This document shows, one piece after another, positions 8,118 through 29,383 of a stretch of 64,000 bases of DNA. Location: the sequence record MW272540.1. One strand, written 5' to 3'. The notes under the pieces were generated by a model. That model did no database searches. It was given only the letters and a program-made list of their open reading frames with translations, and had not been told where the DNA came from. How positions within the stretch are numbered: position 1 is the stretch's first letter; each line of letters starts with the position of its first letter. The translations under genes were made by a program, and so were the position numbers.

Positions 8118-8927
8118 TTAATAGTAAACGACTAAACATTCTTGAACTTTTTTACGATTGCTACCATCGCTACTTACGGTTCTCTGTAAATCGAATAGAT
8201 GGATTTCATCTGCGTCGGAATAGAGATTTTCTGTATATGGAGTCCAATGATTGCTTATCATTGCTACACTATTACACTCTTTCGATAATTTTTTTAATTC
8301 TTCTTGTTGTTCTAAATTGAACCCGTCTTTGGTGTATTTGAAATTGGAAGTGAGTGGTACGTATGGTGGATCTGAATAAACAAGACAATCATCACGACCT
8401 TTGATAAGTTCAAATATTTCGGAGAAGTTTTTGTTGTGTAATTCAGTATTGTCTCTGTGTTTTTCAGATAGAGCTATAATACTATCCGATGGAACGACTT
8501 TCGGGTTTTTTGTAACAGTCCCTTTACTAACGTTAAAAAGTCCATTTTTATTATACCTACAGAGTCCATTGAATCCATGTTTATTCAGATATTGGAAAAT
8601 CGCAGCTCGTTCAACTTCATTAAATTTTCCAGAATTGAATTTATCTCGGATTGCTTCATATGAGTCAAACCCAAATTCAAACAACCTTTTTGAAATTTCA
8701 ATGTACTTTTCTGGTTCTTTAAACATAACGTTATAACTATCAATTAAATCTTTATTATAATCATTCCAGATATATCCTTCTGAATCATAATTTAGACTAA
8801 TATTAGCTGCACCAATAAATGGTTCTACCAATATTGATTTCTTAAAATTATTTAATATTGGGAGGACGTGAGGGAGAGCCCTCGATTTACCACCAACCCA
8901 CTGAAATGGACTATTAACATATTTCAT
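8118..8927 (-). CDS. dam: DNA adenine methyltransferase (T4 Dam-like, alpha class)
   Basis: PFQWVGGKS, LVEPFIGA (motif I), NKHGFNGLCRYN, VYSDPPY (motif IV). Confidence 0.93.
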   Translation of the reverse strand: MKYVNSPFQWVGGKSRALPHVLPILNNFKKSILVEPFIGAANISLNYDSEGYIWNDYNKDLIDSYNVMFKEPEKYIEISKRLFEFGFDSYEAIRDKFNSGKFNEVERAAIFQYLNKHGFNGLCRYNKNGLFNVSKGTVTKNPKVVPSDSIIALSEKHRDNTELHNKNFSEIFELIKGRDDCLVYSDPPYVPLTSNFKYTKDGFNLEQQEELKKLSKECNSVAMISNHWTPYTENLYSDADEIHLFDLQRTVSSDGSNRKKVQECLVVYY

Positions 8928-17325: not shown

Positions 17326-17346
17326 GGATGGTCTCCTAAAAGTAAA

Positions 17347-17368
17347 GGGGGTTACCTAAGTAACCCCC
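17347..17368 (-). terminator. Rho-independent terminator
   Basis: GGGGGTTAC-TTAG-GTAACCCCC followed by TTTACTTT. Confidence 0.8.
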
Positions 17369-17382
17369 TCATTTTATCTCTC

Positions 17383-23096: not shown

Positions 23097-23124
23097 ATAA
23101 AAGAAAGGGGCAAGTGCCCCTAAT

Positions 23125-24259: not shown

Positions 24260-25420
24260 TTACACCTTCAAGAAATCTTTATGTTGAATTTGTTCTTTAA
24301 GTATATTATCGAAACCTAGTAACTCAGTCAACCGATTTCTACAGGCAATGACGTTATCTTCTACTATGTCAAATCCATAAAGATTGTGGGTGATATCTTC
24401 CGGGTTGTGACCTAGCTCCAATCTCTTTTCTGCGATGCGATATAGGATGTTTCCGTCTCCACACGCCGGATCGAGAAAAGACCCGTCCCAGTTAACAACC
24501 CTCGATAATAACATATCTGTTACAATGTTAGGTGTAAACACCTCATGAGTTGATTTCTGACGCTCTATGTCAAACTCTGACGCCACCCTATTCTTATCCA
24601 CTATGTGGGTCCCTGAATGATATTTCCCACGTGATTCTACATCGTAGTAAGGTAAGATTCCCATATAGTCACAAATCCATTCACGAATCGTTGGGAGTGG
24701 TTTGGTTAGATCTGGATATGGCACTGATGCAAGAGTACCCGAGTCTAGATGTTGATTATTCTTATATAGTGCCAAGAACACCCTAGCATAATCTGATTTT
24801 ATATATTCTAAGAATTTGTTAGCTTCCTCTAACGTATCAAATCCATAATGATGCCATTTAAGGTTTGGTTCTGTTTCTACTTTGTATTCTTTTGGAACCA
24901 TTGTAAAGAAATCAGAGTTGAACCTCTCTCCAGAAATTGGTATATGACCACGAATCAACCCAATATTTACGAAATAGTTTCCTTTTGGGTTTTGATTATC
25001 CAAAAGGTTTTTTGAAACCGGTAATACGTCATAAAGTTTTTTAATCTTTGTGCCGAAATAGTTGAGTTCGTCAACCTTCATCCGATCTCGACCATTTGTC
25101 ATAGGTCCATATACCTCGATATACCCATCATATGGCAGCTTACAGATTGTGTGAGTTATAGATAACGGGACAAACAGACCAGCAGAAAAATATAGGTTAC
25201 CATCAATGAGTTCCATTGAAGTCATATTCTGGCTAATTATCTTTTTGAAGTCAGTCACCCGTTTCTGTTCTCTAACTGGACGACGATTAAAAAACGGTGC
25301 TGATGGATGGATACACACGATCTCTTTCGAAATTGTGTGTGCCTTATTGAAGAAATCTAGATGAAGGTTTCTTAAATAAGGTGGATTCATAATAACATAA
25401 TCAAACATTCGATTATTCAT
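24260..25420 (-). CDS. Circularly permuted amino-DNA methyltransferase (Eco57I/TaqI-like motifs)
   Basis: N-terminal FDYVIMNPPY (motif IV), central TRD-like region, C-terminal HEVFTP (X), FLDPACGDGNIL (I), LYGFDI (II), IQHKDFL (III). Confidence 0.85.
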   Translation of the reverse strand: MNNRMFDYVIMNPPYLRNLHLDFFNKAHTISKEIVCIHPSAPFFNRRPVREQKRVTDFKKIISQNMTSMELIDGNLYFSAGLFVPLSITHTICKLPYDGYIEVYGPMTNGRDRMKVDELNYFGTKIKKLYDVLPVSKNLLDNQNPKGNYFVNIGLIRGHIPISGERFNSDFFTMVPKEYKVETEPNLKWHHYGFDTLEEANKFLEYIKSDYARVFLALYKNNQHLDSGTLASVPYPDLTKPLPTIREWICDYMGILPYYDVESRGKYHSGTHIVDKNRVASEFDIERQKSTHEVFTPNIVTDMLLSRVVNWDGSFLDPACGDGNILYRIAEKRLELGHNPEDITHNLYGFDIVEDNVIACRNRLTELLGFDNILKEQIQHKDFLKV

Positions 25421-25430
25421 TTTCTCACCA

Positions 25431-25452
25431 AAAGGAAAGGGGGTTTCCCCCC
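25431..25452 (-). terminator. Terminator immediately upstream of the permuted methyltransferase
   Basis: GGGGG-GAAA-CCCCC-TTTCCTTTT, ending about 10 nt before the ATG. Confidence 0.75.
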
Positions 25453-25688
25453 TCGTTTATTCAACTTTATCAATTTCACCAATAATACTTTCAACAAACC
25501 CCACTAGGGAATGGAAATCCCCAAACAAAGCCTCGTCCACTTCTTCGATAAAAAACACTTTTCGAAATGAATCATATTTCACATGTAGGTCTGTAACCAT
25601 AAAGATATTATAATCACGCTTCATACGAACAGTTACTTTGCAAACCGGTACGTTTTCCATGATTTTTTCGATATTGATATTGTACATA

Positions 25689-29334: not shown

Positions 29335-29383
29335 TAGCATATACCTCATATCATAATAGGGGGAGTTTACCCCCCTCATTCGT

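What the first reader, a model, noticed from the sequence alone, without database searches (positions are those of the whole stretch)
24260..25452. Circularly permuted gamma-class DNA methyltransferase behind its own terminator
The motifs are TaqI/Eco57I-like (gamma type): EVFTP, FLDPACGDG, LYGFDI, DFL and NPPY. Their order here is IV-TRD-X-I-II-III instead of X-I-II-III-IV-TRD. The protein ends at IQHKDFLKV and begins at MFDYVIMNPPY, so the termini fall where a canonical enzyme runs ...DFL...FD...NPPY. This looks like a clean natural permutant, or a fusion of a split two-gene MTase. A strong terminator ends about 10 nt before the start, implying low read-through expression. It is a second methylase besides Dam, and its specificity is unknown.
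Basis: partly seen in the sequence, partly recalled or inferred. Interest (0 to 1): 0.72.

Follow-up and report, generated by a model that had tools for sequence, protein, structure and literature searches.

The report
Permuted TaqI-type phage DNA methyltransferase
An Aeromonas T4-like phage carries an intact, conserved adenine DNA methyltransferase whose two halves sit in swapped order compared with its own relatives, and sister phages encode the same halves as two separate genes, so one gene family shows how an enzyme gets rearranged.

Summary
Window 24260-25420 (minus strand) of Aeromonas phage ZPAH1 encodes a 386-aa protein with NPPY (motif IV) at residues 12-15 and motifs X, I, II and III at residues 293-384. 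All sequence and fold matches are to gamma/"class A" N6-adenine enzymes (HsdM, M.TaqI, CamA, BseCI), always in swapped order. None is to the beta-class family.

Full-length relatives in normal gamma order match both halves (E 2e-22 and 3e-14). The cut falls in the motif III-IV loop, with loop length conserved to one residue. AlphaFold gives one confident globule (pLDDT 93, pTM 0.91); only the linker that joins the old termini is uncertain.

The permuted form occurs in 31 phage records, all Aeromonas T4-like phages, and is under strong purifying selection (dN/dS about 0.05-0.09). Related phages (Ah1, Shigella PSD9, Vibrio phi-ST2, metagenomic contigs) encode the halves as two adjacent genes, catalytic/TRD first.

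Caveats:
- The linear order formally equals Malone's class beta order, so the order itself is not new.
- The upstream hairpin is real but is one of several similar ones, and its effect on expression is untested.
- Activity and target sequence are unknown.

Dam is present at 8118-8927.

The parts
24260..25420 (-). CDS of the circularly permuted N6-adenine DNA methyltransferase (386 aa plus stop codon)
   Evidence: ORF; annotation; full-length match to phrog_11371 at E 2.5e-200; AlphaFold pLDDT 93.2 and pTM 0.91.
25076..25420 (-). Catalytic subdomain, residues 1-115. It holds strands beta4-beta7 and two extra strands, with motif IV NPPY at residues 12-15 (25376-25387).
   Evidence: Eco57I profile positions 71-91 match residues 2-22. 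NPP[YF] is kept in 108 of 108 aligned homologues. Model strands are E6-11, E31-39, E66-72, E86-92, E100-105 and E110-115.
24644..25075 (-). Target recognition domain, residues 116-259. It ends at LPYY, which is the C-terminus of the gamma-order and split relatives.
   Evidence: Alignments. Foldseek matches catalytic subdomain plus TRD to CamA (about 214 columns, E 1.8e-5, probability 1.0) and to M.TaqI. It is the most conserved part between ZPAH1 and CC2 (dN 0.051).
24578..24643 (-). Linker, residues 260-281, joining the ancestral C-terminus (TRD end) to the ancestral N-terminus (leader of the SAM-binding half)
   Evidence: It holds the only model segment with pLDDT below 50 (residues 268-273). 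In the split relatives, gene 1 stops and gene 2 starts at this point.
24263..24577 (-). SAM-binding subdomain, residues 282-386. Motif X EVFTP is at 24530-24544, motif I FLDPACGDG at 24452-24478, motif II LYGFDI at 24365-24382 and motif III KDFL at 24269-24280.
   Evidence: Pfam N6_Mtase profile 17-93 matches residues 283-360. Matches HsdM, BseCI and P0016 N-termini. Model strands are E315-317, E347-351 and E378-380. Coordinates.
25436..25454 (-). Terminator-like GC hairpin (7 bp, GAAA loop) followed by an interrupted U-run. It lies in the 36-nt gap between the upstream gene's stop (25457) and the start codon.
   Evidence: Phage 65 has a different GC hairpin with a T-run at the same position. 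CC2 has none.
25424..25429 (-). Shine-Dalgarno-like GGTGAG, 3 nt upstream of the first ATG
   Evidence: Read directly from the sequence.

Best explanation
The gene encodes a functional, probably monomeric, SAM-dependent N6-adenine DNA methyltransferase of the TaqI/CamA/HsdM lineage, and its chain is circularly permuted.

Domain layout:
- Residues 1-115 form the catalytic half of the Rossmann-like sheet (beta4-beta7). NPPY would hold the flipped-out adenine.
- Residues 116-259 form a CamA/TaqI-like DNA recognition domain.
- A floppy linker of about 22 residues follows.
- Residues 282-386 supply the SAM-binding half (motif X helix, beta1-beta3). This half packs back against beta4 to complete the active site.

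Likely function: the phage expresses the gene from its early leftward gene cluster, by read-through of a short intrinsic-terminator-like hairpin. The enzyme methylates an as yet unknown sequence in phage DNA, most likely to block host restriction, alongside Dam.

Likely origin: an ancestral gamma-order gene was broken in the motif III-IV loop into a SAM-binding gene and a catalytic/TRD gene. The order catalytic/TRD then SAM became fixed in T4-like phages. In the Aeromonas phage lineage the two genes fused.

Shown: the motif order, homology of both halves to gamma-order relatives, the confident single-domain model, conservation under purifying selection, and the existence of split relatives in both gene orders.

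Inferred: enzymatic activity, adenine and DNA as substrate, anti-restriction role, monomeric state, direction of the fission and fusion events, and the effect of the hairpin.
For: Gamma lineage:
- Pfam N6_Mtase and Eco57I match in swapped order, as does BseCI.
- A family profile against the PDB hits only HsdM (7vru, E 6e-7; 3ufb; 2okc; 5ybb), M.TaqI (E 1.2e-4), DrdV and METTL5. In every alignment shown the order is swapped.
- Foldseek top hits are CamA (E 1.8e-5) and M.TaqI (E 7e-4).

True permutation:
- BLAST matches to P0016, P0018 and P0019 cover both halves in swapped order.
- P0016 matches the N6_Mtase profile in one unbroken stretch, motifs I to IV.
- Loop length at the cut is conserved: DTL+6 residues+FD in P0016 against DFL+7 residues+FD across the window protein's termini.

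One fold:
- pLDDT 93.2 and pTM 0.91. All seven core strands plus the two extra strands typical of class A are predicted. Only residues 268-273 are of low confidence.

Function retained:
- 31 phage records carry the full-length form.
- dN/dS is 0.055 (against CC2) and 0.086 (against phage 65), and the catalytic, TRD and SAM parts are all constrained.
- NPPY and the motif I glycines are invariant.

DNA as substrate:
- The same catalytic/TRD module sits at the C-terminus of 1100-1400-aa proteins. One has a weak ResIII hit and a related 1385-aa neighbour gene carries ResIII.
- It is fused to GIY-YIG nuclease domains.
- A stand-alone SAM half sits next to an Mrr nuclease gene.

Fission and fusion:
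- Split pairs with the catalytic/TRD gene first occur in L006, L009, Ah1_00104/00103, PSD9 ORF103/102 and phi-ST2 0371/0372.
- A split pair with the SAM gene first occurs in L008.
- All of these but PSD9 and phi-ST2 fall with the window protein in one clade (support 100/96), nested among gamma-order proteins.
Against: - No biochemical or methylome data exist for any member of this clade.
- I could not read the model coordinates. Packing of beta1 against beta4 is inferred from pTM and pLDDT, not seen directly.
- NPPY also occurs in protein and RNA methyltransferases (HemK, METTL5; PMC7544214), and METTL5 appears among weak profile hits.
- The tree does not fix the direction of events. The nine fused proteins form two groups with the split forms between them (support 84/93), and a single origin is merely not rejected (AU p 0.33). 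The fused form could be ancestral in this clade and the split forms secondary.
- dS is saturated, so dN/dS values are approximate.
- CC2 lacks the hairpin, so it is not required for the gene's regulation.
Confidence: 0.78

Rival explanations
1. It is simply an ordinary member of the long-known beta class (PvuII, RsrI, CcrM, Mod-like), whose standard order is IV-TRD-I. No recent permutation is involved.
For: The linear order is exactly that of class beta (PMC7544214). Foldseek lists beta-class structures (Mbo45V Mod, M1.HpyAVI) at E 4e-3 to 1e-2 over nearly the full length.
Against: There is no PF01555 or other beta-family hit at E up to 1. No beta-class chain appears in the PDB profile search at E up to 1. 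The motif IV variant is NPPY, whereas D/S-PP-Y/F is typical of class B (bioRxiv 10.1101/2023.12.13.571470). Gamma-order homologues match both halves. The beta-class Foldseek matches have rmsd of 17 A and TM about 0.3.
Confidence: 0.04
2. The permutation arose by tandem duplication of a gamma-order gene, in-frame fusion, and loss of the outer halves (Jeltsch 1999 model). On this view it did not arise by fission into two genes followed by re-fusion.
For: L010 shows SAM-half sequences on both sides of a catalytic/TRD gene. Upstream is a 77-aa remnant almost identical to the N-terminus of gamma-order P0048. Downstream is a separate 155-aa SAM half. A decaying tandem duplication could look like this.
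Against: No tandemly duplicated full-length intermediate turned up among 176 relatives. The two SAM pieces in L010 are not close copies of each other. Two-gene forms are common in T4-like phages, and in the window protein the gene boundary falls exactly at the linker.
Confidence: 0.15
3. The fused permuted gene is the older state in this phage clade. The two-gene forms are secondary, produced when mobile endonuclease genes or other insertions split it. This has happened to nrdA and gene 43 in Aeromonas T4-like phages.
For: In L006 an unrelated 244-aa ORF sits exactly between the two halves. PSD9 and phi-ST2 carry a GIY-YIG domain on the catalytic half. Homing-endonuclease splitting of genes in Aeh1 and phage 25 is documented, and the halves reassemble (PMC2988022). 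The tree places the split forms between two fused groups.
Against: This explains the splits at the TRD/SAM junction. It does not explain how the chain came to start at motif IV in the first place. L008 has the SAM gene first. The L006 middle ORF has no Pfam or PHROG match.
Confidence: 0.3
4. The protein is not an active DNA methyltransferase. It could be an RNA or protein methyltransferase, or a DNA-binding relic.
For: NPPY enzymes include HemK/PrmC and METTL5 (PMC7544214; weak hits). No experimental data exist. Most phage records annotate it as hypothetical.
Against: All SAM-binding and catalytic motifs are intact and conserved. The recognition domain resembles those of CamA and TaqI. Family members are fused to or neighbour restriction-type helicases and nucleases. 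Purifying selection is strong.
Confidence: 0.08

Closest known systems
M.TaqI and CamA (gamma-class, 'class A' N6-adenine DNA methyltransferases with a recognition domain after the catalytic domain; PDB 2adm, 8fs1)
   Same: They are the best structural matches. They share the NPPY catalytic motif, the motif X, I, II and III sequences, the two extra strands after beta7, and a recognition domain that directly follows the catalytic strands.
   Different: In TaqI and CamA the SAM-binding half comes first in the chain. Here it comes last, after the recognition domain, and the chain starts 5-11 residues before NPPY. Sequence identity is only 12-16%.
Type I HsdM subunits and M.BseCI (Pfam N6_Mtase PF02384)
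   Same: They are the best sequence matches for the SAM-binding half and for the FD..NPPY segment.
   Different: The matched segments are in swapped order. HsdM has no fused recognition domain and relies on HsdS.
Class beta amino-methyltransferases (M.PvuII, M.RsrI, CcrM, EcoP15I Mod, M.EcoGII; PMC7544214)
   Same: The linear order is identical: motif IV-VIII, TRD, motif X, motifs I-III. The connectivity is the same, with the TRD inserted between the last strand and the motif X helix.
   Different: No detectable sequence relationship. Motif IV is NPPY, not D/S-PP-Y/F. The recognition domain is TaqI/CamA-like. Class beta enzymes are thought to act as obligate dimers (PMC7544214), which could not be tested here.
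Previously described natural MTase permutants (M.BssHII; and, from my own recollection of Bujnicki 2002, the delta and zeta enzymes M.MwoI and M.TvoORF1413P) and engineered circular permutants of M.SssI and M.MpeI (PMC5944983)
   Same: All show that the MTase fold tolerates new chain termini. Fragmentation and re-fusion has been proposed as one route to permutation.
   Different: By my recollection those natural cases derive from beta-class or m5C enzymes. The Bujnicki paper could not be read here. This case is a gamma-lineage enzyme. Unpermuted, split (both gene orders) and fused forms all survive among its near relatives.
Genes split in T4-like Aeromonas phages (Aeh1 nrdA/mobE, phage 25 gene 43; PMC2988022)
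   Same: The split relatives (L006, Ah1, PSD9, phi-ST2) are T4-like phage genes broken into two ORFs that must reassemble. In some, an intervening ORF or a fused nuclease-type domain is present.
   Different: The window gene is the fused form. No endonuclease gene is associated with it.

Membership tests
Gamma-class / 'class A' N6-adenine DNA MTases (N6_Mtase, Eco57I, TaqI-like) | Significant sequence similarity to the family profiles | tested here: met
   PF02384 scores 26.5 bits against a cutoff of 20.4. PF07669 scores 18.3 bits, below its cutoff. A family profile hits HsdM at E 6e-7 and TaqI at E 1.2e-4.
Gamma-class / 'class A' N6-adenine DNA MTases (N6_Mtase, Eco57I, TaqI-like) | NPPY/F catalytic motif IV | tested here: met
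   NPPY at residues 12-15. NPP[YF] in 108 of 108 aligned homologues.
Gamma-class / 'class A' N6-adenine DNA MTases (N6_Mtase, Eco57I, TaqI-like) | Linear order X-I-II-III-IV-...-VIII-TRD (SAM-binding motif before catalytic motif) | tested here: not met
   The order here is IV...TRD-X-I-II-III. By the positional definition it is therefore not a gamma-class enzyme, although it descends from that lineage.
Gamma-class / 'class A' N6-adenine DNA MTases (N6_Mtase, Eco57I, TaqI-like) | Two additional strands after the last core strand (S0, S-1 of Samokhina and Alexeevski) | tested here: met
   Strands E100-105 and E110-115 follow E86-92 in the high-confidence model. This is a prediction, not a solved structure.
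Class beta amino-MTases (Malone 1995; PF01555 N6_N4_Mtase, MT-A70) | [quoted passage not shown] | tested here: met
   Definition quoted from PMC7544214.
Class beta amino-MTases (Malone 1995; PF01555 N6_N4_Mtase, MT-A70) | Sequence membership in the beta families, with a D/S-PP-Y/F motif | tested here: not met
   No PF01555 or MT-A70 hit at E up to 1. No beta-class PDB chain at E up to 1. The motif is NPPY.
Class beta amino-MTases (Malone 1995; PF01555 N6_N4_Mtase, MT-A70) | Obligate homodimer with division of labour between subunits | not testable with these tools
   Would need biochemistry or a multimer model.
PHROG 11371 (phage proteins of unknown function) | Full-length profile match | tested here: met
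   E 2.5e-200; residues 4-385 match profile positions 2-383 of 383.
Intrinsic (Rho-independent) terminator | GC-rich stem, short loop, U-run immediately 3' of the stem | tested here: inconclusive
   The stem has 7 bp (5 G-C) with a GAAA loop, at about -14 kcal/mol, but the U-run is interrupted (UUUCCUUUU). The whole-region folding z-score is -0.97. The position is conserved in phage 65 but not in CC2. Termination efficiency is untested.

The most novel reading that the evidence does not exclude
This clade may be a living record of a gamma-to-beta class conversion by gene fission in the motif III-IV loop followed by re-fusion.

On this reading the split forms are working two-subunit methyltransferases. 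A small SAM-binding subunit pairs with interchangeable catalytic/recognition subunits, some of them fused to GIY-YIG nuclease domains. In some phages the small subunit carries a C-terminal tail that resembles, from memory, a sliding-clamp-binding peptide.

That would make it a modular phage DNA-modification or nuclease system of a kind not yet described. It would also be a seventh catalytic-domain topology, outside the six (A-F) of the latest classification.
Probability: 0.3. Interest if true: 0.75.

Novelty: new variant of a known kind. Interest (0 to 1): 0.6.

Why it matters
How the alpha, beta and gamma orders of amino-methyltransferases arose has been argued since the 1990s. The candidates are tandem duplication and fragmentation followed by fusion. 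The classes are now so diverged that the steps cannot be traced.

This family keeps several states side by side:
- the normal gamma order;
- two-gene forms in both gene orders;
- the fused permuted form.

One phage, Ah1, carries both a fused and a split copy. The route can therefore be tested directly by phylogeny and by expressing the halves.

The enzyme also shows that beta order is not a reliable sign of the beta family. A 2025 topology classification of about 175,000 REBASE MTases lists no class-A-type enzyme with the catalytic motif first.

In practical terms, it is an uncharacterised second methylase in a group of Aeromonas phages under study for aquaculture. It could affect which host restriction systems those phages escape. 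Natural split pairs could also guide the design of split-methyltransferase tools.

Tried and rejected
Steps that led nowhere:
- Bujnicki's 2002 paper on MTase permutations is not held in the library. Statements about it rest on how other papers cite it and on my memory.
- Model coordinates are not exposed. I could not measure contacts between beta1 and beta4.
- Pfam and PHROG gave nothing for the 244-aa ORF that separates the halves in L006, so its HNH-like look is by eye only. They also gave nothing for the N-terminal extensions of about 280 aa in P0033, P0035 and Ah1_00104.
- Rfam found nothing credible around the hairpin.
- The first AlphaFold run, with 13 sequences, was mediocre (pLDDT 71.7). 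A 126-row alignment that included half-length relatives fixed this.
- Literature searches for a described permuted gamma-type MTase, for split adenine MTases in T4-like phages, or for the Aeh1 or phage 65 homologue found nothing specific.

Readings rejected:
- Beta-family membership: no sequence signal.
- Pseudogene or assembly artefact: 31 genomes carry the form, and dN/dS is about 0.05-0.09.
- A missed upstream exon or longer ORF: the reading frame is closed upstream, and the hairpin fills the gap.
- A general reading of the 45 short proteins that start at motif IV. I inspected only four contexts, and one (L010) is partly a broken gamma-order gene.

Not attempted:
- Prediction of the target sequence. 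There is no characterised close relative.
Full report
WHAT IS THERE

The window is the first 64 kb of Aeromonas phage ZPAH1 (Straboviridae, Ishigurovirus). On the minus strand, 24260-25420 is a 386-aa ORF, annotated in GenBank as an adenine-specific DNA methylase. It lies in a long run of small leftward genes.

- FDYVIM-NPPY at residues 6-15
- EVFTP at 293-297
- FLDPACGDG at 315-323
- LYGFDI at 347-352
- KDFL at 381-384, three residues from the end

The first ATG gives MNNRMFDY.... It has a GGTGAG Shine-Dalgarno 3 nt upstream.

THE ORDER IS REALLY SWAPPED

Pfam N6_Mtase positions 17-93 match residues 283-360, above the curated cutoff. Eco57I positions 71-91, the FD..NPPY stretch, match residues 2-22. 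The solved gamma enzyme M.BseCI aligns its residues 9-91 to query 284-364 and its 127-141 to query 6-20.

The decisive test came from homologues found in the 5.8-billion-protein search.
- P0016, P0018 and P0019 (381-385 aa) have the normal order.
- They match the window protein in both halves, crosswise. Query 293-385 matches subject 8-103 (E 2.7e-14). Query 6-237 matches subject 109-349 (E 2e-22).
- P0016 matches the N6_Mtase profile in one unbroken stretch from motif I to motif IV.

The cut is clean. P0016 reads DTL, six residues, FD..NPPY. The window protein reads DFL-KV-stop at its end and M-NNRM-FD..NPPY at its start, which makes seven residues across the termini.

At the other side, gamma-order and split relatives end at a conserved ..YY. 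They begin about 5-25 residues before E-V/F-F/Y-T-P. In the window protein those two points (LPYY at residue 259, EVFTP at residue 293) are bridged by residues 260-292. Residues 275-292 of this bridge align with the N-terminal leader of the stand-alone SAM-half genes.

FOLD

With a 126-row alignment that includes full-length permuted proteins and half-length relatives, AlphaFold2 gives pLDDT 93.2 and pTM 0.91. Only residues 268-273 fall below 50.

The secondary-structure order is:
- beta4 (residues 6-11, ending in NPPY), a helix, beta5, a helix, beta6, beta7
- two extra strands (100-105 and 110-115)
- a mixed recognition domain (about 116-259)
- the linker
- two helices carrying motif X
- beta1 (315-317), a helix, beta2 (347-351), helices, beta3 (378-380)

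That is a complete seven-stranded MTase domain. It includes the two additional strands that Samokhina and Alexeevski give as the hallmark of their class A (bioRxiv 10.1101/2023.12.13.571470).

Foldseek against the PDB puts CamA first (E 1.8e-5, probability 1.0, about 214 columns), then M.TaqI. Beta-class structures come later, with rmsd near 17 A. A profile of the family against all PDB sequences finds only HsdM subunits, M.TaqI, DrdV, METTL5 and a few other weak methyltransferase hits, and no beta-class enzyme. In the alignments shown the order is swapped.

I could not read coordinates. The packing of the C-terminal half against beta4 is therefore inferred from the confidence scores, not observed.

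THE FAMILY

A profile search of 1.84 billion representatives gave 5,419 hits. I sorted 176 relatives with separate HMMs for the two halves.
- The catalytic/TRD module occurs in gamma-order proteins of about 380-420 aa. 41 have a detectable SAM half in front, and 52 more have an N-terminal extension that my small HMM did not recognise.
- It sits at the C-terminus of 17 proteins longer than 800 aa, most of them 1100-1400 aa. One has a weak ResIII hit.
- It occurs in 45 short proteins that begin at motif IV.
- It occurs in only 18 proteins in the permuted single-chain form. Most of these are close relatives of the window protein.

In trees of the module the window protein sits in a well-supported clade (100/96). 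That clade holds nine permuted proteins and five split or N-extended ones, and it is nested among gamma-order proteins. A few other permuted proteins (P0026/P0031, P0040, P0061) fall elsewhere on long branches. The fused permuted form may therefore have arisen more than once, but that is tentative.

SPLIT RELATIVES

Catalytic/TRD gene first:
- L006 has a catalytic/TRD gene (694-1482), an unrelated 244-aa ORF, then a SAM-half gene (2338-2952).
- L009 has a 567-aa protein (an N-terminal extension plus catalytic/TRD), overlapped by a 200-aa SAM-half gene.
- Aeromonas phage Ah1 carries both a fused permuted copy (Ah1_00077) and a split pair (Ah1_00104, 545 aa, then Ah1_00103, 166 aa).
- Shigella phage PSD9 (ORF103 and ORF102) and Vibrio phage phi-ST2 (0371 and 0372) have the same pair. 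Their first protein carries a LEM-3-like GIY-YIG nuclease domain at its N-terminus.

SAM-half gene first:
- In L008 the SAM-half gene comes first and overlaps the start of the catalytic/TRD gene.

Ambiguous or partial contexts:
- L010 is a gamma-order gene broken after motif I, with a separate SAM-half gene downstream.
- L007 has a stand-alone SAM half next to an Mrr-type nuclease gene.

Two-gene versions therefore exist in both gene orders among near relatives. In the window protein the boundary between the genes falls at the low-confidence linker.

The direction of events is not settled. The nine fused proteins form two groups with the split forms between them. Monophyly of the nine is not rejected (AU p 0.33). 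Splitting of genes in Aeromonas T4-like phages by mobile endonucleases is documented, and the pieces reassemble (PMC2988022). Some splits may therefore be secondary.

CONSERVATION

tblastn finds the full-length permuted protein in 31 of 50,697 phage records. All are Aeromonas T4-like phages of three groups: Ishigurovirus, Ceceduovirus, and the Aeh1/phiAS5/PX29/Ah1 group. Identity goes down to 37%. Most records call it hypothetical.

dN/dS is 0.055 against CC2 and 0.086 against phage 65. The catalytic, recognition and SAM parts are each constrained. dS is saturated, so these are rough figures.

THE HAIRPIN

On the minus strand, 25454-25436 folds into a 7-bp stem with a GAAA loop (about -14 kcal/mol), followed by UUUCCUUUU. 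It fills most of the 36-nt gap after the upstream gene's stop. The pattern is not expected by chance.
- Phage 65 has a different GC hairpin plus T-run at the same place.
- In CC2 the upstream gene overlaps the start codon and there is no hairpin.
- Similar AGGGGG...CCCCCT hairpins follow at least two other stop codons within 10 kb (17370-17345 and 23121-23106), with a third candidate on the opposite strand near 29358-29376. This is a recurrent punctuation of the early region, not a private feature of this gene.
- There is no room for a promoter between hairpin and start. The nearest good promoter-like site on this strand is at 26230-26201.
- In T4, comparable weak terminators stop about 30% of transcripts (PMC2988022).

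Reduced read-through expression is plausible but untested.

CLASSIFICATION AND NOVELTY

Malone's classes are defined by order alone. Beta is motif IV-TRD-motif I, and gamma is motif I-motif IV-TRD (PMC7544214). By that rule the window protein has the beta order, so the order is not new.

By descent it is a gamma/class A enzyme. The 2025 topology classification of REBASE and UniProt MTases describes six topologies. It ties NPPY and the class A profiles exclusively to the SAM-first order. I found no paper describing a gamma-lineage enzyme with the catalytic motif first, or this phage family. I could not read Bujnicki 2002.

I therefore rate it a new variant of a known kind. Circular permutation of MTases is an established idea, and this is an unusually clear, recent and traceable natural case.

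MECHANISM

Shown:
- the architecture
- homology of both halves to gamma-order relatives
- conservation under purifying selection
- the predicted single domain

Inferred from the family:
- SAM binds to the C-terminal subdomain (motifs X and I-III).
- The target adenine is flipped into the NPPY pocket.
- The TaqI/CamA-like domain reads the DNA sequence.
- The product is m6A at an unknown motif.
- The role is protection of phage DNA from host restriction, alongside Dam (window 8118-8927, PF02086, E 2e-40).

Noticed in passing
L006:2338-2952, L008:1-363, L019:4139-4639 (Ah1_00103), C-termini of P0010 and P0168: The SAM-binding halves of the Ah1/phiAS5-type relatives end in a short acidic-hydrophobic tail (..TLDDMFGI, ..SLEDLLG, ..SLENLFDI, ..TLEAFF, ..VEEIFF). 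From memory this resembles the sliding-clamp (gp45) binding peptides at the C-termini of T4/RB69 gp43, gp33 and gp55. If so, methylation might be tethered to the replication clamp. The window protein lacks the tail.
   Followed up: no
L016:1506-3471 (Shigella phage PSD9 ORF103/102); L017:1352-3510 (Vibrio phage phi-ST2 0371/0372): A LEM-3-like GIY-YIG nuclease domain is fused to the catalytic/recognition half of the methyltransferase. An overlapping gene for the SAM-binding half follows. This could be a two-subunit nuclease-methylase of unknown role in T4-like phages.
   Followed up: partly
L018:7995-9242 and L019:2462-4639 (Aeromonas phage Ah1): One phage genome carries both a fused permuted copy (Ah1_00077) and a split pair (Ah1_00104 plus Ah1_00103) of the same family.
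   Followed up: partly
L006:1543-2277: A 244-aa ORF sits exactly between the two methyltransferase halves. By eye it has an HNH-like His...Asn...His stretch, but it has no Pfam or PHROG match.
   Followed up: partly
L013:1413-2573 (Aeromonas phage 65, GU459069): About 40 residues at the end of the recognition domain and the linker differ completely from phages 65.2 and avDM6. The flanks agree, which looks like a compensated double frameshift or a sequencing error in the 2010 record.
   Followed up: no
L010:3132-4770: A gamma-order gene is broken after motif I. A 77-aa ORF is nearly identical to the N-terminus of P0048. It is followed by the catalytic/TRD ORF P0077 and then a separate, divergent 155-aa SAM-half gene. 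This may be a snapshot of subunit replacement.
   Followed up: partly
window 17345-17370, 23106-23121, 25436-25454, 29358-29376: GC hairpins of the form AGGGGG...CCCCCT plus a T-run recur just after stop codons in the early gene cluster. Three are on the minus (coding) strand. The 29358-29376 one was reported on the plus strand only.
   Followed up: partly
window 8118-8927 (minus strand): A Dam-type (D12 class, PF02086) adenine methyltransferase of 269 aa. It confirms that the phage carries two unrelated adenine methylases.
   Followed up: yes
L005:2224-7366: The gamma-order homologue P0016 lies on a contig with RNase H and a eukaryote-type topoisomerase IB. This suggests a giant-virus or eukaryote-associated source for that branch of the family.
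   Followed up: no
P0013-P0025 (about 360-aa relatives): This subgroup has only about 68 residues in front of motif IV and no glycine-rich motif I. It may carry a degenerate or minimal SAM-binding half.
   Followed up: no
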